DNA of 64,000 nucleotides from Macrostomum hystrix (GCA_950097015.1 CATNEN010000034.1:1612001-1676000); one strand, 5' to 3'; numbered from the stretch's first letter, positions 78-49,789 are shown. Numbers and translations: made by a program. Notes: generated by a model from the sequence alone, not told the origin.

Positions 78-111
78 GCACGGCTGCTGCCCGATGTGAT
101 GAGAATCAGCT

Positions 112-11587: not shown

Positions 11588-11593
11588 TTTATT
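11588..11593 (-). promoter_or_regulatory. Candidate polyadenylation signal of the giant SecA-like gene
   Basis: TTTATT on + (AATAAA on -) about 90 bp downstream of the TGA at 11684-11686. Confidence 0.4.
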
Positions 11594-11683: not shown

Positions 11684-14600
11684 TCATAGGCGATTTTCGG
11701 AGCTAGCAGTGATGCTAGCTCCATGCTGATTTCCTGAGGCAGTCAAAGCCATGTCCTGGTGTTGTACACTGAGGCTGGCTCCTTCAGAGGAGGCTGCGAT
11801 TCCGACGCGACTGTCACCTCTGCTGGCAGTGATGCTAGCTCCATGCTGATTTCCTGAGGCAGTCAAAGCCATGTCCTGGTGTTGTACACTGAGGCTGGCT
11901 CCTTCAGAGGAGGCTGCGATTCCGACGCGACTGTCACCTCTGCTGGCAGTGATGCTAGCTCCATGCTGATTTCCTGAGGCAGTCAAAGCCATGTCCTGGT
12001 GTTGTACACTGAGGCTGGCTCCTTCAGAAGAGGCTGCGATTCCGACGCGACTGTCACCTCTGCTGGCAGTGATGCTAGCTCCATGCTGATTTCCTGAGGC
12101 AGTCAAAGCCATGTCCTGGTGTTGTACACTGAGGCTGGCTCCTTCAGAAGAGGCTGCGATTCCGACGCGACTGTCACCTTTGCTGGCAGTGATGCTAGCT
12201 CCATGCTGATTTCCTGAGGCAGTCAAAGCCATGTCCTGGTGTTGTACACTGAGGCTGGCTCCTTCAGAAGAGGCTGCGATTCCGACGCAACTGTCACCTC
12301 TGCTGGCAGTGATGCTAGCTCCATGCTGATTTCCTGAGGCAGTCAAAGCCATGTCCTGGTGTTGTACACTGAGGCTGGCTCCTTCAGAAGAGGCTGCGAT
12401 TCCGACGCAACTGTCACCTCTGCTGGCAGTGATGCTAGCTCCATGCTGATTTCCTGAGGCAGTCAAAGCCATGTCCTGGTGTTGTACACTGAGGCTGGCT
12501 CCTTCAGAAGAGGCTGCGATTCCGACGCGACTGTCACCTCTGCTGGCAGTGATGCTAGCTCCATGCTGATTTCCTGAGGCAGTCAAAGCCATGTCCTGGT
12601 GTTGTACACTGAGGCTGGCTCCTTCAGAAGAGGCTGCGATTCCGACGCGACTGTCACCTTTGCTGGCAGTGATGCTAGCTCCATGCTGATTTCCTGAGGC
12701 AGTCAAAGCCATGTCCTGGTGTTGTACACTGAGGCTGGCTCCTTCAGAAGAGGCTGCGATTCCGACGCAACTGTCACCTTTGCTGGCAGTGATGCTAGCT
12801 CCATGCTGATTTCCTGAGGCAGTCAAAGCCATGTCCTGGTGTTGTACACTGAGGCTGGCTCCTTCAGAAGAGGCTGCGATTCCGACGCGACTGTCACCTC
12901 TGCTGGCAATGATGCTAGCTCCATGCTGATTTCCTGAGGCAGTCAAAGCCATGTCCTGGTGTTGTACACTGAGGCTGGCTCCTTCAGAAGAGGCTGCGAT
13001 TCCGACGCGACTGTCACCTCTGCTGGCAGTGATGCTAGCTCCATGCTGATTTCCTGAGGCAGTCAAAGCCATGTCCTGGTGTTGTACACTGAGGCTGGCT
13101 CCTTCAGAAGAGGCTGCGATTCCGACGCGACTGTCACCTCTGCTGGCAGTGATGCTAGCTCCATGCTGATTTCCTGAGGCAGTCAAAGCCATGTCCTGGT
13201 GTTGTACACTGAGGCTGGCTCCTTCAGAAGAGGCTGCGATTCCGACGCGACTGTCACCTCTGCTGGCAGTGATGCTAGCTCCATGCTGATTTCCTGAGGC
13301 AGTCAAAGCCATGTCCTGGTGTTGTACACTGAGGCTGGCTCCTTCAGAAGAGGCTGCGATTCCGACGCGACTGTCACCTCTGCTGGGAGTGAGTCTAGCT
13401 CCATGCTGATTTCCTGAGGCAGTCAAAGCCATGTCCTGGTGTTGTACACTGAGGCTGGCTCCTTCAGAAGAGGCTGCGATTCCGACGCAACTGTCACCTC
13501 TGCTGGCAGTGATGCTAGCTCCATGCTGATTTCCTGAGGCAGTCAAAGCCATGTCCTGGTGTTGTACACTGAGGCTGGCTCCTTCAGAAGAGGCTGCGAT
13601 TCCGACGCGACTGTCACCTCTGCTGGCAGTGAGTCTAGCGCCATGCTGATTTCCTGAGGCAGTCAAAGCCATGTCCTGGTGTTGTACACTGAGGCTGGCT
13701 CCTTCAGAAGAGGCTGCGATTCCGACGCAACTGTCACCTCTGCTGGCAGTGATGCTAGCTCCATGCTGATTTCCTGAGGCAGTCAAAGCCATGTCCTGGT
13801 GTTGTACACTGAGGCTGGCTCCTTCAGAAGAGGCTGCGATTCCGACGCGACTGTCACCTCTGCTGGCAGTGATGCTAGCTCCATGCTGATTTCCTGAGGC
13901 AGTCAAAGCCATGTCCTGGTGTTGTACACTGAGGCTGGCTCCTTCAGAAGAGGCTGCGATTCCGACGCGACTGTCACCTCTGCTGGCAGTGATGCTAGCT
14001 CCATGCTGATTTCCTGAGGCAGTCAAAGCCATGTCCTGGTGTTGTACACTGAGGCTGGCTCCTTCAGAAGAGGCTGCGATTCCGACGCGACTGTCACCTC
14101 TGCTGGCAGTGATGCTAGCTCCATGCTGATTTCCTGAGGCAGTCAAAGCCATGTCCTGGTGTTGTACACTGAGGCTGGCTCCTTCAGAAGAGGCTCCGAT
14201 TCCGACGCGACTGTCACCTTTGCTGGCAGTGATGCTAGCTCCATGCTGATTTCCTGAGGCAGTCAAAGCCATGTCCTGGTGTTGTACACTGAGGCTGGCT
14301 CCTTCAGAAGAGGCTCCGATTCCGACGCGACTGTCACCTTTGCTGGCAGTGATGCTAGCTCCATGCTGATTTCCTGAGGCAGTCAAAGCCATGTCCTGGT
14401 GTTGTACACTGAGGCTGGCTCCTTCAGAAGAGGCTGCGATTCCGACGCGACTGTCACCTTTGCTGGCAGTGATGCTAGCTCCATGCTGATTTCCTGAGGC
14501 AGTCAAAGCCATGTCCTGGTGTTGTACACTGAGGCTGGCTCCTTCAGAAGAGGCTGCGATTCCGACGCGACTGTCACCTCTGCTGGCAGTGATGCTAGCT

Positions 14601-17600
14601 CCATGCTGATTTCCTGAGGCAGTCAAAGCCATGTCCTGGTGTTGTACACTGAGGCTGGCTCCTTCAGAAGAGGCTGCGATTCCGACGCGACTGTCACCTC
14701 TGCTGGCAGTGATGCTAGCTCCATGCTGATTTCCTGAGGCAGTCAAAGCCATGTCCTGGTGTTGTACACTGAGGCTGGCTCCTTCAGAAGAGGCTGCGAT
14801 TCCGACGCGACTGTCACCTCTGCTGGCAGTGATGCTAGCTCCATGCTGATTTCCTGAGGCAGTCAAAGCCATGTCCTGGTGTTGTACACTGAGGCTGGCT
14901 CCTTCAGAAGAGGCTGCGATTCCGACGCGACTGTCACCTCTGCTGGGAGTGATGCTAGCTCCATGCTGATTTCCTGAGGCAGTCAAAGCCATGTCCTGGT
15001 GTTGTACACTGAGGCTGGCTCCTTCAGAAGAGGCTGCGATTCCGACGCAACTGTCACCTCTGCTGGCAGTGATGCTAGCTCCATGCTGATTTCCTGAGGC
15101 AGTCAAAGCCATGTCCTGGTGTTGTACACTGAGGCTGGCTCCTTCAGAAGAGGCTGCGATTCCGACGCGACTGTCACCTCTGCTGGCAGTGAGTCTAGCG
15201 CCATGCTGATTTCCTGAGGCAGTCAAAGCCATGTCCTGGTGTTGTACACTGAGGCTGGCTCCTTCAGAAGAGGCTGCGATTCCGACGCAACTGTCACCTC
15301 TGCTGGCAGTGATGCTAGCTCCATGCTGATTTCCTGAGGCAGTCAAAGCCATGTCCTGGTGTTGTACACTGAGGCTGGCTCCTTCAGAAGAGGCTGCGAT
15401 TCCGACGCGACTGTCACCTTTGCTGGCAGTGATGCTAGCTCCATGCTGATTTCCTGAGGCAGTCAAAGCCATGTCCTGGTGTTGTACACTGAGGCTGGCT
15501 CCTTCAGAAGAGGCTGCGATTCCGACGCAACTGTCACCTCTGCTGGCAGTGATGCTAGCTCCATGCTGATTTCCTGAGGCAGTCAAAGCCATGTCCTGGT
15601 GTTGTACACTGAGGCTGGCTCCTTCAGAAGAGGCTGCGATTCCGACGCGACTGTCACCTCTGCTGGGAGTGAGTCTAGCTCCATGCTGATTTCCTGAGGC
15701 AGTCAAAGCCATGTCCTGGTGTTGTACACTGAGGCTGGCTCCTTCAGAAGAGGCTGCGATTCCGACGCAACTGTCACCTCTGCTGGCAGTGATGCTAGCT
15801 CCATGCTGATTTCCTGAGGCAGTCAAAGCCATGTCCTGGTGTTGTACACTGAGGCTGGCTCCTTCAGAAGAGGCTGCGATTCCGACGCGACTGTCACCTC
15901 TGCTGGCAGTGAGTCTAGCGCCATGCTGATTTCCTGAGGCAGTCAAAGCCATGTCCTGGTGTTGTACACTGAGGCTGGCTCCTTCAGAAGAGGCTCCGAT
16001 TCCGACGCGACTGTCACCTTTGCTGGCAGTGATGCTAGCTCCATGCTGATTTCCTGAGGCAGTCAAAGCCATGTCCTGGTGTTGTACACTGAGGCTGGCT
16101 CCTTCAGAAGAGGCTGCGATTCCGACGCGACTGTCACCTTTGCTGGCAGTGATGCTAGCTCCATGCTGATTTCCTGAGGCAGTCAAAGCCATGTCCTGGT
16201 GTTGTACACTGAGGCTGGCTCCTTCAGAAGAGGCTGCGATTCCGACGCGACTGTCACCTTTGCTGGCAGTGATGCTAGCTCCATGCTGATTTCCTGAGGC
16301 AGTCAAAGCCATGTCCTGGTGTTGTACACTGAGGCTGGCTCCTTCAGAAGAGGCTGCGATTCCGACGCGACTGTCACCTCTGCTGGCAGTGATGCTAGCT
16401 CCATGCTGATTTCCTGAGGCAGTCAAAGCCATGTCCTGGTGTTGTACACTGAGGCTGGCTCCTTCAGAAGAGGCTGCGATTCCGACGCGACTGTCACCTC
16501 TGCTGGCAGTGATGCTAGCTCCATGCTGATTTCCTGAGGCAGTCAAAGCCATGTCCTGGTGTTGTACACTGAGGCTGGCTCCTTCAGAAGAGGCTGCGAT
16601 TCCGACGCGACTGTCACCTTTGCTGGCAGTGATGCTAGCTCCATGCTGATTTCCTGAGGCAGTCAAAGCCATGTCCTGGTGTTGTACACTGAGGCTGGCT
16701 CCTTCAGAAGAGGCTGCGATTCCGACGCAACTGTCACCTCTGCTGGCAGTGATGCTAGCTCCATGCTGATTTCCTGAGGCAGTCAAAGCCATGTCCTGGT
16801 GTTGTACACTGAGGCTGGCTCCTTCAGAAGAGGCTGCGATTCCGACGCGACTGTCACCTCTGCTGGCAGTGAGTCTAGCGCCATGCTGATTTCCTGAGGC
16901 AGTCAAAGCCATGTCCTGGTGTTGTACACTGAGGCTGGCTCCTTCAGAAGAGGCTGCGATTCCGACGCAACTGTCACCTCTGCTGGCAGTGATGCTAGCT
17001 CCATGCTGATTTCCTGAGGCAGTCAAAGCCATGTCCTGGTGTTGTACACTGAGGCTGGCTCCTTCAGAAGAGGCTGCGATTCCGACGCGACTGTCACCTT
17101 TGCTGGCAGTGATGCTAGCTCCATGCTGATTTCCTGAGGCAGTCAAAGCCATGTCCTGGTGTTGTACACTGAGGCTGGCTCCTTCAGAAGAGGCTGCGAT
17201 TCCGACGCAACTGTCACCTCTGCTGGCAGTGATGCTAGCTCCATGCTGATTTCCTGAGGCAGTCAAAGCCATGTCCTGGTGTTGTACACTGAGGCTGGCT
17301 CCTTCAGAAGAGGCTGCGATTCCGACGCGACTGTCACCTCTGCTGGGAGTGAGTCTAGCTCCATGCTGATTTCCTGAGGCAGTCAAAGCCATGTCCTGGT
17401 GTTGTACACTGAGGCTGGCTCCTTCAGAAGAGGCTGCGATTCCGACGCAACTGTCACCTCTGCTGGCAGTGATGCTAGCTCCATGCTGATTTCCTGAGGC
17501 AGTCAAAGCCATGTCCTGGTGTTGTACACTGAGGCTGGCTCCTTCAGAAGAGGCTGCGATTCCGACGCGACTGTCACCTCTGCTGGCAGTGAGTCTAGCG

Positions 17601-20600
17601 CCATGCTGATTTCCTGAGGCAGTCAAAGCCATGTCCTGGTGTTGTACACTGAGGCTGGCTCCTTCAGAAGAGGCTGCGATTCCGACGCAACTGTCACCTC
17701 TGCTGGCAGTGATGCTAGCTCCATGCTGATTTCCTGAGGCAGTCAAAGCCATGTCCTGGTGTTGTACACTGAGGCTGGCTCCTTCAGAAGAGGCTGCGAT
17801 TCCGACGCAACTGTCACCTCTGCTGGCAGTGATGCTAGCTCCATGCTGATTTCCTGAGGCAGTCAAAGCCATGTCCTGGTGTTGTACACTGAGGCTGGCT
17901 CCTTCAGAAGAGGCTGCGATTCCGACGCGACTGTCACCTTTGCTGGCAGTGATGCTAGCTCCATGCTGATTTCCTGAGGCAGTCAAAGCCATGTCCTGGT
18001 GTTGTACACTGAGGCTGGCTCCTTCAGAAGAGGCTGCGATTCCGACGCGACTGTCACCTCTGCTGGCAGTGATGCTAGCTCCATGCTGATTTCCTGAGGC
18101 AGTCAAAGCCATGTCCTGGTGTTGTACACTGAGGCTGGCTCCTTCAGAAGAGGCTGCGATTCCGACGCGACTGTCACCTCTGCTGGCAGTGATGCTAGCT
18201 CCATGCTGATTTCCTGAGGCAGTCAAAGCCATGTCCTGGTGTTGTACACTGAGGCTGGCTCCTTCAGAAGAGGCTCCGATTCCGACGCGACTGTCACCTT
18301 TGCTGGCAGTGATGCTAGCTCCATGCTGATTTCCTGAGGCAGTCAAAGCCATGTCCTGGTGTTGTACACTGAGGCTGGCTCCTTCAGAAGAGGCTCCGAT
18401 TCCGACGCGACTGTCACCTTTGCTGGCAGTGATGCTAGCTCCATGCTGATTTCCTGAGGCAGTCAAAGCCATGTCCTGGTGTTGTACACTGAGGCTGGCT
18501 CCTTCAGAAGAGGCTGCGATTCCGACGCGACTGTCACCTTTGCTGGCAGTGATGCTAGCTCCATGCTGATTTCCTGAGGCAGTCAAAGCCATGTCCTGGT
18601 GTTGTACACTGAGGCTGGCTCCTTCAGAAGAGGCTGCGATTCCGACGCGACTGTCACCTCTGCTGGCAGTGATGCTAGCTCCATGCTGATTTCCTGAGGC
18701 AGTCAAAGCCATGTCCTGGTGTTGTACACTGAGGCTGGCTCCTTCAGAAGAGGCTGCGATTCCGACGCGACTGTCACCTCTGCTGGCAGTGATGCTAGCT
18801 CCATGCTGATTTCCTGAGGCAGTCAAAGCCATGTCCTGGTGTTGTACACTGAGGCTGGCTCCTTCAGAAGAGGCTCCGATTCCGACGCGACTGTCACCTT
18901 TGCTGGCAGTGATGCTAGCTCCATGCTGATTTCCTGAGGCAGTCAAAGCCATGTCCTGGTGTTGTACACTGAGGCTGGCTCCTTCAGAAGAGGCTCCGAT
19001 TCCGACGCGACTGTCACCTTTGCTGGCAGTGATGCTAGCTCCATGCTGATTTCCTGAGGCAGTCAAAGCCATGTCCTGGTGTTGTACACTGAGGCTGGCT
19101 CCTTCAGAAGAGGCTGCGATTCCGACGCGACTGTCACCTTTGCTGGCAGTGATGCTAGCTCCATGCTGATTTCCTGAGGCAGTCAAAGCCATGTCCTGGT
19201 GTTGTACACTGAGGCTGGCTCCTTCAGAAGAGGCTGCGATTCCGACGCGACTGTCACCTCTGCTGGCAGTGATGCTAGCTCCATGCTGATTTCCTGAGGC
19301 AGTCAAAGCCATGTCCTGGTGTTGTACACTGAGGCTGGCTCCTTCAGAAGAGGCTGCGATTCCGACGCGACTGTCACCTCTGCTGGCAGTGATGCTAGCT
19401 CCATGCTGATTTCCTGAGGCAGTCAAAGCCATGTCCTGGTGTTGTACACTGAGGCTGGCTCCTTCAGAAGAGGCTGCGATTCCGACGCGACTGTCACCTC
19501 TGCTGGCAGTGATGCTAGCTCCATGCTGATTTCCTGAGGCAGTCAAAGCCATGTCCTGGTGTTGTACACTGAGGCTGGCTCCTTCAGAAGAGGCTGCGAT
19601 TCCGACGCGACTGTCACCTCTGCTGGCAGTGATGCTAGCTCCATGCTGATTTCCTGAGGCAGTCAAAGCCATGTCCTGGTGTTGTACACTGAGGCTGGCT
19701 CCTTCAGAAGAGGCTGCGATTCCGACGCAACTGTCACCTCTGCTGGCAGTGATGCTAGCTCCATGCTGATTTCCTGAGGCAGTCAAAGCCATGTCCTGGT
19801 GTTGTACACTGAGGCTGGCTCCTTCAGAAGAGGCTGCGATTCCGACGCGACTGTCACCTCTGCTGGCAGTGAGTCTAGCGCCATGCTGATTTCCTGAGGC
19901 AGTCAAAGCCATGTCCTGGTGTTGTACACTGAGGCTGGCTCCTTCAGAAGAGGCTGCGATTCCGACGCAACTGTCACCTCTGCTGGCAGTGATGCTAGCT
20001 CCATGCTGATTTCCTGAGGCAGTCAAAGCCATGTCCTGGTGTTGTACACTGAGGCTGGCTCCTTCAGAAGAGGCTGCGATTCCGACGCAACTGTCACCTC
20101 TGCTGGCAGTGATGCTAGCTCCATGCTGATTTCCTGAGGCAGTCAAAGCCATGTCCTGGTGTTGTACACTGAGGCTGGCTCCTTCAGAAGAGGCTGCGAT
20201 TCCGACGCGACTGTCACCTTTGCTGGCAGTGATGCTAGCTCCATGCTGATTTCCTGAGGCAGTCAAAGCCATGTCCTGGTGTTGTACACTGAGGCTGGCT
20301 CCTTCAGAAGAGGCTGCGATTCCGACGCGACTGTCACCTCTGCTGGCAGTGATGCTAGCTCCATGCTGATTTCCTGAGGCAGTCAAAGCCATGTCCTGGT
20401 GTTGTACACTGAGGCTGGCTCCTTCAGAAGAGGCTGCGATTCCGACGCGACTGTCACCTCTGCTGGCAGTGATGCTAGCTCCATGCTGATTTCCTGAGGC
20501 AGTCAAAGCCATGTCCTGGTGTTGTACACTGAGGCTGGCTCCTTCAGAAGAGGCTCCGATTCCGACGCGACTGTCACCTTTGCTGGCAGTGATGCTAGCT

Positions 20601-38600: not shown

Positions 38601-41600
38601 CCATGCTGATTTCCTGAGGCAGTCAAAGCCATGTCCTGGTGTTGTACACTGAGGCTGGCTCCTTCAGAAGAGGCTGCGATTCCGACGCAACTGTCACCTC
38701 TGCTGGCAGTGATGCTAGCTCCATGCTGATTTCCTGAGGCAGTCAAAGCCATGTCCTGGTGTTGTACACTGAGGCTGGCTCCTTCAGAAGAGGCTGCGAT
38801 TCCGACGCGACTGTCACCTCTGCTGGCAGTGATGCTAGCTCCATGCTGATTTCCTGAGGCAGTCAAAGCCATGTCCTGGTGTTGTACACTGAGGCTGGCT
38901 CCTTCAGAAGAGGCTGCGATTCCGACGCGACTGTCACCTCTGCTGGCAGTGATGCTAGCTCCATGCTGATTTCCTGAGGCAGTCAAAGCCATGTCCTGGT
39001 GTTGTACACTGAGGCTGGCTCCTTCAGAAGAGGCTGCGATTCCGACGCGACTGTCACCTTTGCCGGCAGTGATGCTAGCTCCATGCTGATTTCCTGAGGC
39101 AGTCAAAGCCATGTCCTGGTGTTGTACACTGAGGCTGGCTCCTTCAGAAGAGGCTGCGATTCCGACGCGACTGTCACCTCTGCTGGCAGTGATGCTAGCT
39201 CCATGCTGATTTCCTGAGGCAGTCAAAGCCATGTCCTGGTGTTGTACACTGAGGCTGGCTCCTTCAGAAGAGGCTGCGATTCCGACGCGACTGTCACCTC
39301 TGCTGGCAGTGATGCTAGCTCCATGCTGATTTCCTGAGGCAGTCAAAGCCATGTCCTGGTGTTGTACACTGAGGCTGGCTCCTTCAGAAGAGGCTGCGAT
39401 TCCGACGCGACTGTCACCTTTGCTGGCAGTGATGCTAGCTCCATGCTGATTTCCTGAGGCAGTCAAAGCCATGTCCTGGTGTTGTACACTGAGGCTGGCT
39501 CCTTCAGAAGAGGCTGCGATTCCGACGCGACTGTCACCTTTGCTGGCAGTGATGCTAGCTCCATGCTGATTTCCTGAGGCAGTCAAAGCCATGTCCTGGT
39601 GTTGTACACTGAGGCTGGCTCCTTCAGAAGAGGCTGCGATTCCGACGCGACTGTCACCTCTGCTGGCAGTGATGCTAGCTCCATGCTGATTTCCTGAGGC
39701 AGTCAAAGCCATGTCCTGGTGTTGTACACTGAGGCTGGCTCCTTCAGAAGAGGCTGCGATTCCGACGCGACTGTCACCTTTGCCGGCAGTGATGCTAGCT
39801 CCATGCTGATTTCCTGAGGCAGTCAAAGCCATGTCCTGGTGTTGTACACTGAGGCTGGCTCCTTCAGAAGAGGCTGCGATTCCGACGCGACTGTCACCTC
39901 TGCTGGGAGTGATGCTAGCTCCATGCTGATTTCCTGAGGCAGTCAAAGCCATGTCCTGGTGTTGTACACTGAGGCTGGCTCCTTCAGAAGAGGCTGCGAT
40001 TCCGACGCGACTGTCACCTCTGCTGGCAGTGATGCTAGCTCCATGCTGATTTCCTGAGGCAGTCAAAGCCATGTCCTGGTGTTGTACACTGAGGCTGGCT
40101 CCTTCAGAAGAGGCTGCGATTCCGACGCGACTGTCACCTTTGCTGGCAGTGATGCTAGCTCCATGCTGATTTCCTGAGGCAGTCAAAGCCATGTCCTGGT
40201 GTTGTACACTGAGGCTGGCTCCTTCAGAAGAGGCTGCGATTCCGACGCGACTGTCACCTTTGCTGGCAGTGATGCTAGCTCCATGCTGATTTCCTGAGGC
40301 AGTCAAAGCCATGTCCTGGTGTTGTACACTGAGGCTGGCTCCTTCAGAAGAGGCTGCGATTCCGACGCGACTGTCACCTCTGCTGGCAGTGATGCTAGCT
40401 CCATGCTGATTTCCTGAGGCAGTCAAAGCCATGTCCTGGTGTTGTACACTGAGGCTGGCTCCTTCAGAAGAGGCTGCGATTCCGACGCGACTGTCACCTC
40501 TGCTGGCAGTGATGCTAGCTCCATGCTGATTTCCTGAGGCAGTCAAAGCCATGTCCTGGTGTTGTACACTGAGGCTGGCTCCTTCAGAAGAGGCTGCGAT
40601 TCCGACGCGACTGTCACCTCTGCTGGCAGTGATGCTAGCTCCATGCTGATTTCCTGAGGCAGTCAAAGCCATGTCCTGGTGTTGTACACTGAGGCTGGCT
40701 CCTTCAGAAGAGGCTGCGATTCCGACGCGACTGTCACCTTTGCTGGCAGTGATGCTAGCTCCATGCTGATTTCCTGAGGCAGTCAAAGCCATGTCCTGGT
40801 GTTGTACACTGAGGCTGGCTCCTTCAGAAGAGGCTGCGATTCCGACGCGACTGTCACCTCTGCTGGCAGTGATGCTAGCTCCATGCTGATTTCCTGAGGC
40901 AGTCAAAGCCATGTCCTGGTGTTGTACACTGAGGCTGGCTCCTTCAGAAGAGGCTGCGATTCCGACGCAACTGTCACCTTTGCTGGCAGTGATGCTAGCT
41001 CCATGCTGATTTCCTGAGGCAGTCAAAGCCATGTCCTGGTGTTGTACACTGAGGCTGGCTCCTTCAGAAGAGGCTGCGATTCCGACGCGACTGTCACCTC
41101 TGCTGGCAGTGATGCTAGCTCCATGCTGATTTCCTGAGGCAGTCAAAGCCATGTCCTGGTGTTGTACACTGAGGCTGGCTCCTTCAGAAGAGGCTGCGAT
41201 TCCGACGCGACTGTCACCTCTGCTGGCAGTGATGCTAGCTCCATGCTGATTTCCTGAGGCAGTCAAAGCCATGTCCTGGTGTTGTACACTGAGGCTGGCT
41301 CCTTCAGAAGAGGCTGCGATTCCGACGCGACTGTCACCTTTGCTGGCAGTGATGCTAGCTCCATGCTGATTTCCTGAGGCAGTCAAAGCCATGTCCTGGT
41401 GTTGTACACTGAGGCTGGCTCCTTCAGAAAAGGCTGCCATTCCGACGCGACTGTCACCTTTGCTGGCAGTGATGCTAGCTCCATGCTGATTTCCTGAGGC
41501 AGTCAAAGCCATGTCCTGGTGTTGTACACTGAGGCTGGCTCCTTCAGAAGAGGCTGCGATTCCGACGCGACTGTCACCTTTGCTCGCAGTGATGCTAGCT

Positions 41601-44600
41601 CCATGCTGATTTCCTGAGGCAGTCAAAGCCATGTCCTGGTGTTGTACACTGAGGCTGGCTCCTTCAGAAGAGGCTGCGATTCCGACGCGACTGTCACCTC
41701 TGCTGGCAGTGATGCTAGCTCCATGCTGATTTCCTGAGGCAGTCAAAGCCATGTCCTGGTGTTGTACACTGAGGCTGGCTCCTTCAGAAGAGGCTGCGAT
41801 TCCGACGCGACTGTCACCTCTGCTGGCAGTGATGCTAGCTCCATGCTGATTTCCTGAGGCAGTCAAAGCCATGTCCTGGTGTTGTACACTGAGGCTGGCT
41901 CCTTCAGAAGAGGCTGCGATTCCGACGCGACTGTCACCTTTGCTGGCAGTGATGCTAGCTCCATGCTGATTTCCTGAGGCAGTCAAAGCCATGTCCTGGT
42001 GTTGTACACTGAGGCTGGCTCCTTCAGAAGAGGCTGCGATTCCGACGCGACTGTCACCTCTGCTGGCAGTGATGCTAGCTCCATGCTGATTTCCTGAGGC
42101 AGTCAAAGCCATGTCCTGGTGTTGTATACTGAGGCTGGCTCCTTCAGAAGAGGCTGCGATTCCGACGCGACTGTCACCTTTGCTGGCAGTGATGCTAGCT
42201 CCATGCTGATTTCCTGAGGCAGTCAAAGCCATGTCCTGGTGTTGTACACTGAGGCTGGCTCCTTCAGAAGAGGCTGCGATTCCGACGCGAACTGTCACCT
42301 TTGCTGGCAGTGATGCTAGCTCCATGCTGATTTCCTGAGGCAGTCAAAGCCATGTCCTGGTGTTGTACACTGAGGCTGGCTCCTTCAGAAGAGGCTGCGA
42401 TTCCGACGCGACTGTCACCTCTGCTGGCAGTGATGCTAGCTCCATGCTGATTTCCTGAGGCAGTCAAAGCCATGTCCTGGTGTTGTACACTGAGGCTGGC
42501 TCCTTCAGAAGAGGCTGCGATTCCGACGCGACTGTCACCTCTGCTGGCAGTGATGCTAGCTCCATGCTGATTTCCTGAGGCAGTCAAAGCCATGTCCTGG
42601 TGTTGTACACTGAGGCTGGCTCCTTCAGAAGAGGCTGCGATTCCGACGCGACTGTCACCTCTGCTGGCAGTGATGCTAGCTCCATGCTGATTTCCTGAGG
42701 CAGTCAAAGCCATGTCCTGGTGTTGTACACTGAGGCTGGCTCCTTCAGAAGAGGCTGCGATTCCGACGCGACTGTCACCTCTGCTGGCAGTGATGCTAGC
42801 TCCATGCTGATTTCCTGAGGCAGTCAAAGCCATGTCCTGGTGTTGTACACTGAGGCTGGCTCCTTCAGAAGAGGCTGCGATTCCGACGCGACTGTCACCT
42901 CTGCTGGCAGTGATGCTAGCTCCATGCTGATTTCCTGAGGCAGTCAAAGCCATGTCCTGGTGTTGTACACTGAGGCTGGCTCCTTCAGAAGAGGCTGCGA
43001 TTCCGACGCGACTGTCACCTTTGCTGGCAGTGATGCTAGCTCCATGCTGATTTCCTGAGGCAGTCAAAGCCATGTCCTGGTGTTTGACCTGTATGGAGTC
43101 TTTCGAAAAGGAGAGGGTGTTCTTGCTATCACTGATTGTTAAAGCATCGTTGCTGATTGATGCTTTTGATTTTGCAAGTGTTTTTCTTGTCGATGTTTTG
43201 TTTTTCTTTTTATTGTTCTTTTTGTCTACTTTCTTCGTTATTCCCGTTGATTGTATCTTTAACTGTGCCTTGTTTTGCTGGTGCGCTGATTTGATTGATT
43301 TTCCGACAGCTCTTCTGACGCCTTCTATTCCAGTTTGAATTAATCTTCCCACACTTTTGCTGATGAGATCATTAAGTATTTTAATGACAGAATCGATTGC
43401 TGTTTCCTGTAATGCCTTTTTGAGTTCTTCTTTCATGTGGAGAAGAGTTTCTTGATTTATTATTTTTTTACTTGATACGTCTAAAGTTTGTTCAAACATC
43501 TTTTTGTATTCTTTGGTCTGCAGCTTTGCATCAACTTTTTGTACAACATCAGTCACGGCGTTGCTTATCTGTGCTGCATGCACTCCAATCGCTGTTGCGT
43601 TGACAGCTACATCAGCTATTTTGATTATGGTAGTTAGACTTTTCAATGCCTTTTCGCTGAAATCATTTCTAAACAGGCTTAGTTTTGCATTCAAGGCATT
43701 AATCACCTTGTCGATTTTTTCAGCGTCTTGAAAAGTCTTTTGGGCAGCGTCAACCAGCAATGTCTGCATTATTTCCAAAACTTGAGCTTGTGATTCTTTC
43801 GAAAGTAGAGCGAAGTCGCAAGTGTCATTCTGGCTGGTTTCCTGGTTCATTTTTAGACACAAAGGAGCGGTAACTCGCAGCAATATCTCATTCAGCCGTC
43901 CATCTTCAACTTCCGATTCGCACTTTTTTATAATGTCTTTGCGCAAGCTCTCCTTCAATTTCTCTATTAACTCCTTAAGAGCTTTCTTCTGCAGTGCGTC
44001 AAGGGCAGTGTTGACAAAAAACTGTGTAATTGGATTTTCCATTATAGTTTTTATGACACGAACGGCATTTGGCCCAATCAGCTTGTTGATCGCTGATCCA
44101 ACCGTAGAATAGCACTTTGACATTATTTTGCCTGCCTTCTGTGCCACGCTGGAACCTATCGCCGTTGATGACTTGAGATAGCCTAGCACTTTTCCAAAGC
44201 CAAATGTGAGCACAGAGATACCAATGTTCATTGCCTTGTTTTTTAGCCATGATTTGGTGTCAAACTCGCCCTGAAGCACGCCCATAACGCCTGCAATGAG
44301 GTCGTTGAATCCCTCGGACACAAAGTATTGTCCGACGTTTACTAATCCAACGTATGACAGAGCGCTTCCAAGTGCGATTTCAACGATTCCAATAATTGCA
44401 ACTGCAAGTGCGATTCCGTACTCTGGCTTCTTCTTCACATCAAAGAACCTCACGTGACCAAGCTGGTATAGCGATCTCAGCTCATCACTTTTTATGCCAT
44501 CGGGATCATTCTCGATGTCTCTAATGCAGGTGCTAGTGGCAATAACCTCCTCCTCTGCTCGTCGGTGTTCTTCCAGTTTTTTTAGATTTTCCTCAAGTTT

Positions 44601-47600
44601 GGCTTTGTACTTATTCAATATTTCGAGTCTTGCACTGCACTGCAAAAACAAATGATTTCTTTCATCTGTGGTCGAACTATCCTGTCGAGTCTCATTTTGA
44701 AACCTTGATCCCGAGTATAATTGTGTCCACATCGTATGGGTCAACCAGGTTTCCTCTATTCTAGTCTTGGCTTCTTTTAAGTCATTCATAACGTCATTTA
44801 GGTCACAGTTGCCCTTTTTTATTTTTGCGTAAGCGCGATTGTAGTACGCGATAGATGACCAGGACTCATTTATTTTGATAGCTCTTGTGAAAAGACCGAT
44901 GGCGCGGTCAAAGTTTCCATGCCGTATATTCTTTTCAGCAAGTTTCAGGGCCTGGAATGGGCTGATTGAACGGTCAGCATCGATATCTGCTTTGGCCTCG
45001 TCGAACATTTTTTCAACATTTCGATTGCAAACAAGAGTTCTCTCTATACTGTAATCGGTCTCGTGTTGTAAGGTTTTCTTGAGATACATTCCCCAAATTT
45101 CCTTGATACAATCTAGTTTTAGCTTAAGGTCAACGTCTTCCTTAATGCATTGATAGTACTCTGAGAGCAAAGCACAGAAACTTCTAAATAGGCTTTCCTT
45201 AAAGTGAACCTCATGCAAGGCATAGTTCTTATGATTCTCAAGCTCTCGCATGCTGGCCTCTCGCCTTTCCTCTTTTATCTCTTGCACCGACTCGCAGTCG
45301 GCAAAGTCGGCACTCATGGTCTCTTTGCTCAGCAGCAGTGTGGCAGATCCTCGCTGACCATTGCGACCACTGCGGCCAAAGACTTGCTCTTCTACTCGCT
45401 GGTTCAGCGGCAGAAAAGTAACCAGTACGTGCAGCCCTCCAGCCTTCTCTGCTGAGTCACTCACTTCGATATCCGTGCCCCTTCCGGCAAGGTTTGTCGC
45501 CACCACCACGTCGCCTGGTTCGACAATCAACTCCGATTCTGTGTCTTCATTTGTGACATACTTCCTCGTATTTGCAGCCGGACAACGGTCAATCACTTCC
45601 TCGTAGATTTTGTTTGCACGGTTGATGTCTTCGCATACAATAAGCGTTGGTCTGCTGCTCTCCTTGACTATTAATTGACACAGCTTGGATACGCATTGGG
45701 CATCAGTATCAGTAACAATGCCCGGATTCTCAAACAACCGACGCTGCCTAAAAGGAGGAATGTAGTTCATTCGCACTTTGTACGTTTCGCGCATGAATTG
45801 CTTCTCATGATCTTCTCCGAGTGTCCCCGACACGCCAAACACGGAGTGACGGTAGCGACGGAAGAAGGCTAAATTAGACAAGAAATTGGTTTCCAGACCA
45901 AGAGGTCGCATCTGCAAGCTGTGCTTCAGTTGAAGAAACTGCTGCAGACCGTCACTCCAACGCATGTTCTCTTGCACTACGCCAGTATGCCGAAAGTCCA
46001 CAGGCACCGCGTCACCATCTTTGACCAGATAGTCCCGTCCCGGCTGCAACACACCCGCAGTCAGAGCACTGTTAATCCACACGTCTAGCATATCATCAAT
46101 GAACTGGTTCAGGTGCTTCGGCATCGGCAACAGGGCTTCCTTTTTTCTTTCATCTTCTGCTTCTTTTGCGGTACTCTCTGGATCTTTATCCTTGAGTGTG
46201 GTGCTGTAGGTTATTCTCGCCTGGATGTCCTCCTTCTTTCTTTGCCTGAACTCGGGAAGATCAGAATAAAGCAGTCTGCAAATTCCGCTCTCTGAAACTA
46301 GAAGGTGTGCATTAGAGGCTGAAACTAGTCGCTCCAGTTCAATCTCTTGATTCCTGGGTGTGTACAAATTAAATTTTGGGAAATTTTCATTCAGTTTTTC
46401 CACTTCACTTAGAATGGCAACGGTCCGTCCAATATTGAATTCGCTTAAATCAACTGGAATTGCTTCCTGAGATAAAAAGCTGCTCTTTTCTGCTGAGGTA
46501 ATAATTTGCCTTTGGACTAATAGCTCAGCCACAGATTGCAACTCTTCCAATGACAAAAACTCTTTTATTAGGTACGGGAAGGTTATAGGCTGCTCCGCCA
46601 CCATTTCGCCGCCATGAGCTGTGTTCAAAACCTGGCAGCCCAGTGTTGCTCGAAAGATAGTAGGAAAGATAGGGTCCAGCATCTTCATGTCCCCCGCCTC
46701 CTGAGCCAGGTACGTCAACTGAACTCCCTGATCCAATAACAGTGAGTCGACTTCATCCACAATTATCGAGTCGCAACCTCGTGAGCCTCGAATTTCCTTA
46801 AACTGGAACTCTTGTCGCAGGATATCGCCAGCAAAGGAAGACACTGTGCCATATACAATTTTTGCTTCATAGCACTGCTTCGGCTTCTCGTGATTTATGT
46901 TGCAATCGGCTAGGAAGCCACATTTTTTGTAAAATTCGGTCCACGCTTTAAAATCTCTTTGCGCTAAGACTTCAGATGGCGCAACGATGTCGACCGACTT
47001 CTCTCCAAGACGCAGGAGTCCCACGGCTACCATAGCAACGATGCATGACTTTCCTTCTCCCGTCATAATTTGCAGAATCTGTCCCATTCTGTCCGTTTCG
47101 TTTGCTGTCTTTGCTGTCGACGCTTCGAGTAGAGCTGCTGCACTAAATATCTGTGTGTGCCTCGGTGTGTAGCCCTTGCACTTTTTCACGGCTTTACAAA
47201 GGCTAACTAGAACATTCGTGATATTCTGCTCAATATTTTTATTTCTTTGAGTCTCTTCACTTTCTCTACTGCGTATTTTTAGTTTCTTAGCTTTGTCGAT
47301 TATATTTTTTGCCATCCTTTGAACAGCAAATTTTTCAAGCTCTTTTAGAACTTCGTTTACAATTATCTGTAGTCTGACTATTCTATTATTATCGAACTCT
47401 CCAGTGAGCTTTATTTCATTCAGCAGCTGCTCCAGCGTTTTGTCCGACTTTTTCTCCGTCTTGAGACTCTCAACCGCGTCCTCTATAGATGCATTGACGG
47501 TGTTCAGAACGATCTCGCTATGGCAGCCGCTTAGTACTATCATCTTAATAAACTCTCGAACTGTCTCTGGCCTCTGTTTTGTCGATTGAATGGTCTGCAT

Positions 47601-49583
47601 TAGTTTTAGCTTAGCTTCACTGTTCCAATGTGAAACAGAGGTTATTAGCTCAACTACACAATCTGTATCTGACTTTGAGTCGAGTTTATCTGAGACTCCC
47701 GCGCTATTCAGCATAGTGCTTATGACAGAATGTAGAGTTCTGAAGCTCACTGCTTCGCTCGGCTTAACTGGCCATAAGAGCACGATATCTTCTGCCACCA
47801 CTAGCAGTTTCAACAAGATTTTCGCCGCTGGGCTCATGTCTTCACTAGCTGCCTCCTGCAGCAAGCAGTCCAGACATGCCAAAGTTCTTAGTGAGCTTAG
47901 AAAATCGAGCTCAAGCTCGCTGCCTCTCTCCCCAACTCCTCGCCCTTGTGTCAGCTGATGAAGATTTAATAAAAGGAGACCGTAGTCGATTACGTCGATT
48001 GTTACTCCAGGAAGGCATTTTTTGAGAATTAGCTGATCGGCAGCTTCAAGAATATAGTTGGCGGTTTCGTCCTCGTCATCAGCGGACATCAGGCTTAGAA
48101 GAATCTGGCGTCGGGATTGCTCCCTTTCTAAGAAAGGTCTGTGGTTTTGGGACTTCCAACTGTCAGCAAGAAGGTCAAGAAAGCCTTCGAATGAATCAGG
48201 GGCCATAGCATTAATACTCGTAGTAGTTGCTAAAACAGCTTTTGTTGCCGAACTGTCATTGTGTGCCGTGTGCAGTCTTGCTAAAATGTAAGCTAATTCT
48301 TCTTGAATGTCTTCGTTCGTGCTGTCTGGGGCATCGCATTGTGCATTTTTGTCGCTTAACTGCGGGGCTGTATAGCCGCTCATGGTCTTGCCTCGTAGGT
48401 GTTGCACAGAGTTGCGCTCAGCAGTATGAGAACTCCGCATGGTCCTTGCCTTCTCTCTCTCCAGCTGTGTGGCCACTTCACACCTAAGCTGAGTTGTCTT
48501 TCTCAGAGTCTCGGAGGCTAGTTTCTGTTGCTCCCTCTGCCTGCGCTGTTCTTCTATTTTCTTGCTGATTTCCGCTTCCCTCTCTGCCAGTTCGGATTCC
48601 AGCTGCGTTCTTCCCTGTTCAATTTCTTGCTGTTGGGAGAGCAACTTCTGCTTCATCTCTTCAGCGAGCTGGTTCATAGCTCGCTGTTTTTCTGTAATTT
48701 CCTTCTCAAATCGATGTTTTCTCTCCTGAAACTGTGCATCCAGGCGAGCCCTATGGTCCTGAGCTTCCAGTTTGAGGCTTTCAATCTTGGCACTCATTTC
48801 GGCCTCGATTCGTTTCTTCTGCTCCTCAAAATTTTCCAGTCTTCTTTTTCGAGCCTCATCAGCCTCCATTTGCTCCAGTGTCAAGTCGCGCTGTGTCTCT
48901 TGTTTCCAATTGGCTTTCCGCGTTTGCAGCTCGGAAAATAGTTCCGATCGGCGGTCCTCTTGAGCGGAGGCATTGGCTTTCATTCTATCTTTTCTTTCTT
49001 GCCTTTGTTTCTCGCATCGCCCGTTGAATTCGTTCTGCCTTTGTTTCCAGCTTGCTAATTCCCGGCGTCTCTGATCGTTGATTCTTTCCCAATTCTGTCT
49101 GCATTGGTCTAGCACCTGATTGTGCTGCCGCTTCTGCTCTTCCAGCTTTTGTCGGTCGAACAGGGACTCCCCCCGGTTAGCCTGCTTCAGCTGCTCCCTT
49201 ACTCCTTCCAATTTCTGCTCCCGTTCGCGGCGCTTTCGGGCGGCAAACATTTCCTTGGTCTCATACTTGTACTCGCCTAATTTTTTACCATCGTAATGCA
49301 GATGAATGACGCCTTCTGACTGCGTGAACAAGCGCCATTCCTTGTTTCTTATTCCATTGCACCAGGATTTCAAGTCGCAGCTTTCAACTGTATCACTTTT
49401 ATTATGCTTTCCATGCTTGAAAAAGATGTCTACTGGTAGGCCCTTATAGTCATAGTGGGTTGACCTTCCCGGTGACAAATTTATGATTTCGGATCCGGCG
49501 CCAGTACGGATAACCATGTACTTTGCCGCAACGCTCCAGTGCTCTTCTGTGTCGTTGCTAAGCTTGCTTCCTGTGTTGCCCAT
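11684..49583 (-). CDS. Giant intronless SecA-type ATPase-domain protein with ~261 x 40-aa C-terminal repeats (~12,630 aa if the +1 base at ~42290 is removed; ~2,440 aa otherwise)
   Basis: ATG at 49583 (MGNTGSK; the track's start at 49619 is GTG). Coiled coil ~48400-49260. SecA motifs: LQIMTGEGKS (Walker A, ~47050), IIVDEVDSLLLD (Walker B, ~46750), MRWSDGLQQFLQLKH, FFRRY...GVSGTLG, VATNLAGRGTDI, GGLHV, RVEEQVFGRSGRNGQRGS (~45370). TPR-like helices ~44820-44920; hydrophobic segments 44190-44420. It runs in frame into the repeat at ~43083. The two track ORFs (42264-49619 and 11684-42325) are joined by a single extra A. Confidence 0.85.
11700..43085 (-). repeat. Coding tandem array: ~261 copies of a 120-bp unit encoding VGIAASSEGASLSVQHQDMALTASGNQHGASITAS(R/K)GDS(R/C)
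   Basis: An exact 120-bp period is visible as alternating identical sequence lines. Only the frame continuous with the SecA-like ORF is open. One indel in ~31 kb. Confidence 0.98.
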
Positions 49584-49789
49584 CTGTGATTTAGAAATCC
49601 TGTCAAAGAATAGCAACACGGTCTTAGCTACGGCTGCATTGGGAAAAGCTATTTAAAAACCTTTTAAACCTGTACGGAAACGTAGTTTAAAATGGACTTC
49701 AAGTCAAGAGAAATAAGGTCCACCATCCAATCAAATGACCGAAACCAGCTCATTATCCCTGGCGATGGTCCCCAAATCAATGGTGACAC

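What the first reader, a model, noticed from the sequence alone, without database searches (positions are those of the whole stretch)
11684..49583. Candidate new system: a ~12,600-aa animal protein fusing a SecA translocase motor to a membrane hairpin and a 10,400-aa repeat tail
Seen: one reading frame carrying MGxxxSK, a coiled coil, an intact SecA-type ATPase (TGEGKS, DEVD, WSDGL, TNLAGRGTDI, GRSGRNG), TPR-like helices, Gly-rich hydrophobic segments, a Lys-rich linker and ~261 x 40-aa repeats. Known: canonical SecA is the bacterial and plastid ATPase that pushes unfolded polypeptide through SecYEG, and animal ER translocation does not use it. From memory (unverified), non-canonical SecA-domain proteins are annotated in some invertebrates and protists without known function. 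Inference: a self-contained, membrane-tethered motor that could thread its own repeat tail or a client through a pore formed by its hydrophobic hairpins, as a toxin, immune effector or fibre-extrusion device. I know of no description of this architecture.
Basis: partly seen in the sequence, partly recalled or inferred. Interest (0 to 1): 0.92.

Follow-up and report, generated by a model that had tools for sequence, protein, structure and literature searches.

The report
SecA-like flatworm gene, giant repeat tail
A Macrostomum-type flatworm has a real gene for a membrane-anchored relative of the bacterial protein-export motor SecA; it belongs to a large unstudied family shared by animals and intracellular bacteria, and here it runs into 261 near-identical 40-residue repeats, although one extra base breaks the reading frame after the eighth repeat in this assembly.

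Summary
The minus strand of 11684-49583 carries an MGNTGSK start, a charged coiled coil, a SecA-type ATPase with its motifs intact, TPR helices, a Gly-rich hydrophobic module, a Lys-rich linker, and 261 units of 120 bp.

It is not one reading frame. An extra T at 42290/42291 splits it into a 2,439-aa ORF and a 10,213-aa ORF. Reading through would give 12,631 aa. I could not tell whether the extra base is real.

The core is not a new architecture. The stretch from the SecA motor to the helical C-part (about 1,400 aa) is conserved in more than 440 database proteins from teleosts, coelacanth, sturgeon, acorn worm and mussel. It is also found in large proteins of Wolbachia, Rickettsiales, Legionellales and Chlamydiae. 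A 2016 phage WO paper noted "eukaryotic-like SecA". I found no functional study.

The repeat tail is specific to Macrostomum. It is conserved at the protein level at three loci (261, about 57 and about 27 units), and the frame stops right after each array. It therefore is, or recently was, coding.

My best reading is a lipid- and hairpin-anchored polypeptide motor on the cytosolic face of a membrane, carrying a hyper-expanded coding minisatellite. Self-threading of the tail is untested. This scan had not noted the family before.

The parts
49563..49583 (-). Start codon and MGNTGSK, an N-myristoylation-type motif
   Evidence: Translation. M. lignano P0001 starts identically. Of 47 family members that start with MG, 37 read MGN and 33 fit a myristoylation-type pattern.
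49224..49562 (-). N-terminal domain (residues 8-120), no known family
   Evidence: No Pfam match at E<=1. Conserved with M. lignano P0001. Only about 2 of 120 hits align here.
48324..49223 (-). Charged coiled-coil-like region (residues 121-420)
   Evidence: 153 of 300 residues are E, K, R or Q. Many family members have E/R-rich repeats at the same place.
45288..47402 (-). SecA-type ATPase motor: NBD1, an animal-specific insert, a PPXD-like domain and NBD2 (residues 728-1432)
   Evidence: Pfam SecA_DEAD 1.8e-28, SecA_PP_bind 1.6e-5, P-loop_SecA 6.9e-8. Profile against PDB SecA 1.4e-66. AF2 pLDDT 81.3. Best structural match SecA 6itc_A, Z 26.4, rmsd 3.3 A over 603 residues. Walker A and B and the Arg motifs are invariant in 49 sequences.
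47046..47063 (-). Walker A motif TGEGKS (residues 841-846)
   Evidence: Invariant columns T152-S157 of alignment A2. Translation.
44979..45287 (-). 48-residue scaffold-like helix followed by a helix-loop-helix (residues 1433-1535)
   Evidence: AF2 helices 744-791, 797-815 and 824-846 of the model. The structural alignment to SecA runs to chain residue 774. No sequence match to the SecA scaffold or wing domains.
44694..44960 (-). TPR helices (about residues 1542-1630)
   Evidence: Pfam TPR_2 is weak (E 0.059). The AF2 model is confident here (pLDDT 82-94). Foldseek matches designed and natural TPRs at prob 0.97-1.0. Conserved in the bacterial relatives.
44184..44429 (-). Gly-rich hydrophobic module (residues 1719-1800): one 30-residue strongly hydrophobic segment plus two Gly-rich helices
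   Evidence: Kyte-Doolittle maximum 2.43 at 1719-1751, the only strong peak in the protein. Invariant Gly and Lys columns in 36 sequences. Alignable to proteins of Rickettsiaceae, Wolbachia and Flavobacteriaceae genomes. AF2 predicts three helices at pLDDT 52-61.
43254..44183 (-). Helical C-terminal region (residues 1801-2110), fold unknown
   Evidence: Homology to 35-70 of 120 animal hits. AF2 confidence is low. No Atlas hit at 0.9 or more.
43158..43232 (-). Lys-rich linker KKVDKKNNKKKNKTSTRKTLAKSKAS (residues 2118-2142)
   Evidence: Translation. A similar Lys-rich linker precedes the arrays in M. lignano and in the C1 paralog.
11702..43142 (-). Tandem array: one degenerate unit plus 261 units of 120 bp (40 aa, consensus SRVGIAASSEGASLSVQHQDMALTASGNQHGASITASRGD)
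   Evidence: TRF. Unit table: 104 units equal the consensus, 25 unit types, 18 variants. Array words are at hundreds of times single-copy depth in DNA run X1.
42290..42291 (-). Single extra T that shifts the frame, in the 8th unit
   Evidence: Sequence. It is the only indel in the array. The read data did not resolve it.
42264..42266 (-). Stop codon of the frame that starts at the Met (product 2,439 aa as assembled)
11684..11686 (-). Stop codon of the repeat frame, 5 codons after the last unit (...ITASSENRL*)
11588..11593 (-). AATAAA poly(A)-signal-like hexamer, 91-96 nt after the stop of the repeat frame
   Evidence: Sequence. Its function was not tested.

Best explanation
Shown:
- This is a real, intronless gene of a Macrostomum-type flatworm.
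- It belongs to a conserved, unstudied family whose core is a SecA-type ATPase (NBD1, PPXD-like clamp domain, NBD2, a long scaffold-like helix), then TPR helices, then a Gly-rich hydrophobic module and a helical C-part.
- Animals share this core with large proteins of intracellular bacteria and phage WO.
- The animal members typically start MGNxxS.

Inferred mechanism:
- Myristate and the hydrophobic module hold the protein on the cytosolic face of a membrane.
- There the motor uses ATP to clamp and move an unfolded polypeptide, as SecA does.
- The TPR acts as a docking site for a partner or a chaperone.
- Whether the hydrophobic module is only an anchor or also forms the conduit is unknown.
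- A role in host-microbe conflict is my guess. It rests on the many teleost homologues, several per species, and on the effector-like bacterial relatives.

The tail:
- In the Macrostomum lineage the C-terminus gained a coding minisatellite. Its units are about 40 aa, rich in Ser, Ala and Gly, look prone to beta strands, and end in (R/K)GD.
- In this copy the minisatellite has grown to 261 units by recent block duplication.
- I read the tail as a passive, fast-evolving extension, not as the motor's substrate.
- In this assembly one extra base ends the frame after about 7 units. I put about 45% on a full 12,631-aa protein being made in the living animal.
For: Gene and family:
- A 7.3-kb ORF with all SecA motifs.
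- ATPase motifs are invariant across 49 relatives.
- AF2 pLDDT 81.3. The best structural matches are substrate-engaged SecA: Z 26.4 against 16 for the next family.
- More than 440 homologues, with homology spanning residues 650-2100.
- A tree puts all animal sequences in one clade (SH-aLRT 100), inside a 76-row clade (SH-aLRT 100) that also holds Wolbachia, Chlamydiae, Rickettsiales and Legionellales proteins; the canonical-SecA rows group apart.
- The bacterial relatives share the TPR and the hydrophobic module. One ends in an OTU protease domain.
- MGN starts are common in the family.
- Only one strongly hydrophobic segment exists, and its Gly residues are invariant.

Tail is or was coding:
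- Arrays of 120, 117-120 and 123 bp follow the same gene body at three loci.
- The units share 38-50% amino-acid identity, and the conserved residues are often written with different codons.
- Each array continues the frame of the sequence just upstream of it, and the frame stops within 5 codons of its end.
- An AATAAA hexamer follows 91 nt after the stop.
- The repeat occurs nowhere else in the genome.
- Runs X5 and X6 (kind not on record, possibly RNA) hold the body at depth 2-8 and the array at 785-1046.
- A 14,794-aa protein is proven in M. lignano (PMC6410801).
Against: - The frame is broken at 42290/42291 in the only assembly available.
- The paralog on contig C1 also closes its frame after about 6.5 units, and it has two more frame changes in the gene body.
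- Variation inside the array fits neutrality: 5 synonymous to 13 non-synonymous variants, with 0.6 stops expected. The 31-kb open frame is therefore not evidence of selection.
- No run on record as RNA holds the gene.
- No experiment exists for any family member, so the mechanism is inferred from homology alone.
- The hydrophobic module and everything after it fold with low confidence.
- SecA's wing domain and two-helix finger were not identified by sequence.
Confidence: 0.55

Rival explanations
1. Truncated product. The extra T is real. The working protein is about 2,440 aa with about 7 repeats, and the other 254 units are a recently expanded, transcribed but untranslated satellite in a 30-kb 3' UTR. 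Alternatively they are translated only from another allele.
For: The assembly itself. The C1 paralog closes its frame after a 6.5-unit block. Family members elsewhere are typically 2,000-2,600 aa without such tails. There is no sign of constraint inside the array.
Against: The insertion is in one unit of 262, and that unit is otherwise identical to the commonest K-type unit, so it is either very recent or an error. The stop and the AATAAA sit exactly at the array's far end. The repeat is conserved at the protein level across loci.
Confidence: 0.4
2. Self-export device. The SecA-like motor threads the protein's own repeat tail through a pore made by its hydrophobic helices or through a host channel, extruding an RGD-studded fibre.
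For: The same logic has been proposed for giant bacterial proteins that combine divergent SecA domains with transmembrane regions (10.1101/2023.11.21.568195), and for giant actinobacterial toxins (PMC8195603). The tail's composition is low in aromatic and charged residues. (R/K)GD is conserved in all three arrays.
Against: Most family members have the same motor and membrane module but no tail, so the motor's job cannot be tail export in general. The Lys-rich linker next to the membrane part argues for a cytosolic position. Only one segment is strongly hydrophobic. No evidence of any kind places the tail outside the cell.
Confidence: 0.1
3. Decaying pseudogene. The whole locus is a dying copy and makes nothing useful.
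For: One frame break here and two in the paralog. Coverage is low in the runs that may be RNA.
Against: 2,439 codons are open with every catalytic motif intact, and all columns that are invariant across 49 relatives are kept. The body is 53% identical to M. lignano P0001 over 2,061 aligned positions, with 5% of them gaps.
Confidence: 0.07
4. Contaminant or misassembly. The array or the gene is bacterial DNA or an assembly artefact.
For: The nearest non-animal relatives are intracellular bacteria.
Against: The gene sits in a multi-Mb flatworm contig between flatworm satellites. A second DNA sample carries it with SNPs. It falls inside the animal clade and shares the animal-only insert. Array depth in reads is hundreds of times single-copy depth, and the unit types form duplicated blocks.
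Confidence: 0.02

Closest known systems
Canonical SecA (bacterial and plastid preprotein translocase ATPase)
   Same: DEAD-type NBD1 and NBD2 with Walker A and B and the Arg motifs. A PPXD-like domain inserted in NBD1. A long helix after NBD2. Profile E 1.4e-66. Structural Z 26.4 over 603 residues.
   Different: No sequence match beyond NBD2, and no wing domain or C-terminal zinc-binding tail was found. It carries about 170 extra residues before the PPXD, which the bacterial relatives lack. It is fused to TPR and to its own hydrophobic module. It has a eukaryotic cytosolic start with a myristoylation-type motif. No SecYEG partner is known. It falls far outside the canonical-SecA clade in the tree.
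Uncharacterised animal proteins annotated 'protein translocase subunit SecA-like' (teleosts, Latimeria, Acipenser, Ptychodera, Mytilus)
   Same: The same family. They are 29-35% identical over the 801 motor residues searched (700-1500), and homology extends across residues 650-2100. They share the MGN start, the charged N-terminal repeats, the TPR and the hydrophobic module with invariant Gly.
   Different: They lack the 40-aa repeat tail; a few have other C-terminal repeats, for example Mytilus P0030 with 46 aa x 9. Fish members have a Cys-rich motif after the start that Macrostomum lacks.
Large SecA-like proteins of intracellular bacteria and phage WO ('eukaryotic-like SecA' of the eukaryotic association module)
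   Same: The clade that surrounds or is sister to the animal family. Best segments are 27-40% identical. Several share the TPR and the Gly-rich hydrophobic module. PMC5062602 noted that the phage WO SecA domains are closer to invertebrate proteins than to bacterial ones.
   Different: They are bacterial genes of 1,600-4,500 aa with other parts, such as an OTU protease. They lack the animal-specific insert. None of those I looked at has a 40-aa repeat array.
Giant bacterial proteins with divergent SecA_DEAD domains (Omnitrophota, Actinobacteria)
   Same: A SecA-like motor built into a giant protein next to membrane segments, with long repetitive beta-rich parts. A published proposal says the motor exports the giant protein itself (10.1101/2023.11.21.568195; PMC8195603).
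   Different: Kinship with this family was not tested here. Those proteins are reported to lack the scaffold helix, have many transmembrane regions and carry enzyme domains. They are bacterial and surface-directed.
Giant repetitive proteins of Macrostomum (Mlig-ap1 with 5,407 aa, Mlig-ap2 with 14,794 aa)
   Same: They show that this genus makes proteins of this size with large repetitive regions (PMC6410801).
   Different: They are secreted adhesives with Cys-rich and lectin-type domains. They have no SecA motor and no sequence relation to this gene.

Membership tests
SecA superfamily (motor) | Two RecA-like nucleotide-binding domains with Walker A, Walker B and the arginine motifs | tested here: met
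   Pfam SecA_DEAD 100.1 bits (cut-off 24.6) and P-loop_SecA 32.8 bits (cut-off 27). The motifs are invariant in alignment A2.
SecA superfamily (motor) | Preprotein cross-linking domain (PPXD) inserted in NBD1 | tested here: met
   Pfam SecA_PP_bind 25.9 bits (cut-off 23.5), covering profile positions 48-109 of 110 only. The HMM alignment to B. subtilis SecA covers residues 231-329.
Canonical SecA translocase | Helical scaffold domain, helical wing domain and two-helix finger after NBD2 | tested here: inconclusive
   No sequence match beyond NBD2. AF2 gives a 48-residue helix plus a helix-loop-helix, and the structural alignment spans SecA chain residues 14-774. There is no room for a wing domain of about 100 residues. 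No conserved fingertip Tyr is seen in the family consensus.
Canonical SecA translocase | Works with SecYEG; C-terminal zinc-binding or SecB-binding tail | tested here: not met
   Working with SecYEG is not testable with these tools. The tail part is not met: the C-terminus is TPR, a hydrophobic module and repeats, with no zinc-binding tail. The protein also falls far outside the canonical-SecA clade.
Animal and intracellular-bacterial SecA-like / TPR / Gly-rich-module family (unnamed) | Falls in the family clade in a motor-domain tree | tested here: met
   The 76-row clade has SH-aLRT 100 and the 46-row animal clade has SH-aLRT 100. The Macrostomum trio is sister to the other animals (quick search, no bootstrap).
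Animal and intracellular-bacterial SecA-like / TPR / Gly-rich-module family (unnamed) | TPR helices and a Gly-rich hydrophobic module after the motor, with invariant Gly | tested here: met
   Alignment A1 of 36 sequences has invariant G270, G300, G312, K344 and G356. BLAST alignments to L021, L037 and L034.
Animal and intracellular-bacterial SecA-like / TPR / Gly-rich-module family (unnamed) | MGN... start (myristoylation-type) in the animal members | tested here: met
   The window protein starts MGNTGSK. 37 of 47 MG-start members read MGN. Actual lipid attachment is not testable here.
Coding minisatellite (in-frame tandem repeat exon) | Unit length a multiple of 3, frame continuous with the gene body, stop at the array's end, amino-acid pattern conserved between loci while codons differ | tested here: inconclusive
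   Met: the unit is 120 bp, the stop lies 5 codons after the array, and cross-locus amino-acid identity is 38-50% with synonymous differences in conserved codons. Not met as assembled: one extra base breaks continuity with the body. Variation inside the array has no power to show selection.

The most novel reading that the evidence does not exclude
Animals carry a family of cytosolic, lipid-anchored SecA-type motors that came from, or were exchanged with, intracellular bacteria. With their own Gly-rich membrane module these motors would form a protein-conducting or membrane-breaching device independent of Sec61. In Macrostomum the device would push its own RGD-studded tail of more than 10,000 residues across a membrane.
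Probability: 0.08. Interest if true: 0.92.

Novelty: new variant of a known kind. Interest (0 to 1): 0.64.

Why it matters
- SecA is treated as a bacterial and plastid machine. Here is a well-conserved family of SecA-type motors with intact ATPase motifs in animals, including many fish. In these proteins the motor is fused to a lipidation signal, TPR helices and its own membrane module. The same core occurs in large, effector-like proteins of Wolbachia, Rickettsiales, Legionellales and Chlamydiae.
- I found no functional study. The family is therefore an open and directly testable question about polypeptide handling at eukaryotic membranes, and about gene exchange between hosts and endosymbionts.
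- The flatworm copy adds an extreme case of a coding tandem repeat, with 261 units at 99.2% identity. It is useful for studying how such arrays grow and whether they are tolerated in proteins.

Tried and rejected
- Pfam on the tail gave only a summed Ig_RIMBP2 score with no single stretch passing. I treat it as a repeat artefact.
- Pfam found nothing in the N-terminal 120 aa or in residues 401-700.
- Atlas feature searches of residues 1700-2165 and of the tail gave no hit at 0.9 or more.
- Foldseek on the C-terminal model found only TPR matches, none at E<=0.001.
- Literature: 'translocase subunit SecA-like' and 'SecA-like' with 'teleost' are in no paper. Broader searches on fish, NLR and SecA gave nothing relevant. 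'Mlig033771' is in no paper.
- The exact-sequence look-up of the 2,439-aa product found nothing on record.
- Read laying over 42150-48149 listed no insertion or deletion row, but it did not show whether any contig crosses 42291. The frameshift stays unresolved. The runs that might be RNA (X5-X8) have no recorded kind, so I do not claim expression.
- The openness of the 31-kb frame as evidence of selection: rejected, because only 18 distinct variants exist and 0.6 stops are expected.
- Reading the two ~445-bp spacers in the C1 array as introns: not supported. The boundary reads GAG TGA with GCGAGT, not a clear GT donor.
- Contamination: rejected.
- The first call of the genome search failed for technical reasons and was repeated.

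Full report
**1. What is in the sequence**

The minus strand holds two very long ORFs. One is 42264..49619 (Met at 49583, product 2,439 aa). The other is 11684..42325 (10,213 aa). They overlap by 62 bases and lie in different frames.

The cause is one extra T at 42290/42291. That unit reads gacagTtcgcg where every other unit reads gacagtcgcg. It is the only indel in the array.

The frame from the Met stops at 42264-42266 after about 7 repeats.

- the MGNTGSK start;
- a region in which 153 of 300 residues are E, K, R or Q;
- the motifs TGEGKS, DEVD, WSDGL, TNLAGRGTDI and GRSGRNG;
- a Gly-rich hydrophobic stretch;
- the linker KKVDKKNNKKKNK...;
- the repeats.

**2. The array**

TRF gives 120 bp x 261.5 copies at 11702-43084. 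I count one degenerate first unit and 261 full units. Of these, 104 are identical to the consensus. There are 25 unit types and 249 differences in 31,320 bases, which is 99.2% identity.

The unit types occur in locally repeated blocks such as ABBAIBAA, GHF, CABD and KACBEA. That is the signature of unequal crossing-over, not of a collapsed or invented assembly.

In DNA run X1 the unique gene body has word depth 78.5, while bins in the array reach 5,000-28,000. This is consistent with hundreds of copies, although summed contig depth is only a rough measure.

The array is too young to test for selection from within:
- It has only 18 distinct variants, 5 synonymous and 13 non-synonymous. The neutral expectation is about 1 to 3.
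- Only 0.6 stop-creating changes are expected.

So the open 31-kb frame is not in itself evidence of coding.

**3. Evidence that the repeat is, or was, coding**

The same gene body is followed by the same kind of array at three loci.

- *This window:* 40-aa units.
- *A paralog at G000:C1, about 527,200-537,700:* units of 39-40 aa, about 27 in three blocks.
- *M. lignano locus L001:* the annotated protein P0001 stops at a frame change. The sequence then continues through helices and a Lys-rich linker into 57 units of 41 aa.

The unit consensuses are:
- window: SRVGIAASSEGASLSVQHQDMALTASGNQHGASITASRGD
- C1: SSIAVSVGKKVVGLTVQHDDMKLGLAHGSEATQVAASRGD
- M. lignano: SKLAVKAGDSGVSVAAQHKDIALGVSHGSDSSTEVAASKGD

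They share 38-50% of residues, including QHxD[MI]xL and AS[RK]GD, at only 44-57% nucleotide identity. In the codons whose amino acid is the same in both units there are 9 to 14 synonymous differences (across 15-20 such codons).

At all three loci the frame stops within 5 codons of the array's end. Here an AATAAA follows 91 nt later.

The repeat occurs nowhere else in the genome at a convincing score.

This is good evidence that the repeat has been under protein-level constraint in this lineage. It does not show that all 261 units are translated today.

**4. The caveat**

The C1 paralog also closes the frame that comes from its body after a first block of 6.5 units (GAG TGA). It then has a ~445-bp spacer, a second block, the same spacer again, and a third block. 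It also has two frame changes in the gene body, one of them in an A7 run.

So either this assembly has indel errors, or both paralogs really make short-tailed proteins. I could not decide:
- The single read-laying run listed no insertion or deletion but did not show the site.
- No exact copy of the product is on record elsewhere.

Runs X5-X8 come from a 2020 study, show no differences from the window, and have about 48 M letters of contigs each. They hold the body at depth 2-8 and array contigs at 785-1046. If they are RNA, the array is transcribed roughly in proportion to its copy number. Their kind is not on record, so I do not count this as proof.

**5. The motor**

- Pfam finds SecA_DEAD, P-loop_SecA and SecA_PP_bind above their gathering scores.
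- A profile of 49 relatives hits PDB SecA at 1.4e-66. The alignment covers NBD1, the PPXD and NBD2 only.
- The AlphaFold model of residues 690-1559 is good (pLDDT 81.3, pTM 0.75).
- Its best matches are SecA chains from substrate-engaged SecA-SecY complexes: 6itc_A with Z 26.4, rmsd 3.3 A, 603 residues, model 44-848 against chain 14-774. The next family, DinG, scores Z 16.
- After NBD2 the model has a 48-residue helix and a helix-loop-helix. There is no room for a wing domain, as in SecA2 of M. tuberculosis (the SecA2 comparison is from my own knowledge).
- The catalytic columns are invariant across the family.

**6. The family**

The protein search gave more than 440 hits. They come from many teleosts (often several per species), Latimeria, Acipenser, Polypterus, Ptychodera and Mytilus. 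Their names are 'uncharacterized' or 'protein translocase subunit SecA-like'.

Homology to the window protein covers residues 650-2100. That span includes the TPR, the hydrophobic module and part of the helical C-region.

Of the 47 hits that begin with MG, 37 read MGN and 33 fit a myristoylation-type pattern. The animal proteins are therefore made in the cytosol and are probably lipid-anchored.

Only the first ~600 residues and the tail are specific to Macrostomum.

**7. Bacterial relatives**

A scan of one genome per prokaryotic species found the closest relatives in the following groups, with best segments 27-40% identical:
- Coxiellaceae
- Rickettsiaceae and other Rickettsiales
- Legionellaceae
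- Midichloriaceae
- Chlamydiae
- Wolbachia

This identity is as high as that between flatworm and fish.

These are ORFs of 1,600-4,500 aa. Several share the TPR and the Gly-rich module almost motif for motif. One ends in an OTU protease domain. They lack about 170 residues (978-1150) that all the animal proteins have.

In a quick maximum-likelihood tree the animal sequences form one clade (SH-aLRT 100), with the Macrostomum trio as sister to the rest. That clade lies inside a 76-row clade (SH-aLRT 100) that also holds the proteins of intracellular bacteria, and the canonical-SecA rows group apart. The root and the direction of transfer were not tested.

**8. What is already known**

- Bordenstein and Bordenstein 2016 listed SecA among the phage WO 'eukaryotic association module' domains that are closer to invertebrate proteins than to bacterial ones (PMC5062602; also PMC9203015).
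- Zhang et al. 2012 mention SecA-like domains in Amoebophilus effectors (PMC3482391).
- Kaur et al. 2021 mention them in giant actinobacterial toxins, 'predicted to facilitate their secretion' (PMC8195603).
- West-Roberts et al. 2023 describe bacterial proteins of up to 85,804 aa with divergent SecA domains next to transmembrane regions, and propose self-export (10.1101/2023.11.21.568195).
- I found no paper on the animal family.
- Proteins of 14,794 aa are proven in M. lignano (PMC6410801).

**9. How it most likely works**

*Shown:*
- an intact SecA-type motor with a clamp domain;
- a TPR;
- one 30-residue strongly hydrophobic segment (Kyte-Doolittle 2.43) plus two Gly-rich helices with invariant Gly;
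- a conserved MGN start.

*Inferred:* the protein sits on the cytosolic face of a membrane and uses ATP to hold and move unfolded polypeptide. The TPR docks a partner.

Because most members have no tail, the motor's client is probably another protein and not the tail. I read the tail as an add-on that looks beta-prone (four strand-like hexamers per unit, by eye only) and evolves fast.

A role in host-microbe conflict is a guess. It rests on the many teleost homologues, several per species, and on the effector-like bacterial relatives.

**10. Verdict**

This is a real gene and a new variant (a giant repeat tail) of an existing but unstudied family. The single-frame claim fails in this assembly. 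The self-threading mechanism remains speculative.

Noticed in passing
G000:C1:527200-537750 (loci L003-L007), minus strand: This is a second SecA-like paralog, 65% identical in the motor. It has two frame changes in the body, one of them in an A7 run. Its repeat array is split into three blocks by two copies of a ~445-bp spacer, and the first two blocks each end in GAG TGA.
   Followed up: partly
L001:16040-23470 (M. lignano NIVC01002610.1): The annotated protein BOX15_Mlig033771g1 (P0001, 2,019 aa) is cut short by a frame change. The gene continues through a Lys-rich linker into 57 units of 123 bp, with many frame breaks in that assembly, and the frame stops 6 nt after the array.
   Followed up: partly
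window 105-796, 2390-3009, 4439-4806, 9211-10629, 49773-51368, 52237-52777, 59837-60663, 61218-61976, 62404-62799, 63234-63915: The gene is surrounded by many short-unit satellites (11-26 bp units, 20-80 copies each). One of them ends only about 190 bp upstream of the start codon.
   Followed up: no
L033 (OZ219990.1, 'Stappiaceae bacterium ... chromosome: 39'): This 24-kb record, filed as part of a bacterial genome from a metagenome, falls deep inside the animal clade of the tree. It is probably eukaryotic DNA binned into a bacterial genome.
   Followed up: no
L018:9698-14569 (Coxiellaceae MAG): This bacterial family member of 1,624 aa ends in an OTU-like cysteine protease domain. That domain is typical of effectors that act on host ubiquitin.
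   Followed up: no
P0107 (Prochilodus magdalenae, 2,422 aa): This fish gene model joins the SecA-like motor to NACHT, FISNA, LRR and ApoL-type domains. It may be a fused annotation of neighbouring genes, but it hints that these genes lie beside NLR genes.
   Followed up: no
window 11702-43142, minus strand: 52 of the 261 units carry Arg5-to-Cys and 99 carry Arg1-to-Lys, so RGD becomes KGD. The first eight units, before the frameshift, are all of the two commonest types.
   Followed up: yes
P0030 (Mytilus coruscus) residues 1576-1992; P0079 residues 2903-3158; P0020 residues 1094-1186: A few other family members have their own, unrelated C-terminal tandem repeats (46 aa x 9, 26 aa x 10, 11 aa x 8). 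The C-terminus of this family may therefore be prone to repeat growth.
   Followed up: no
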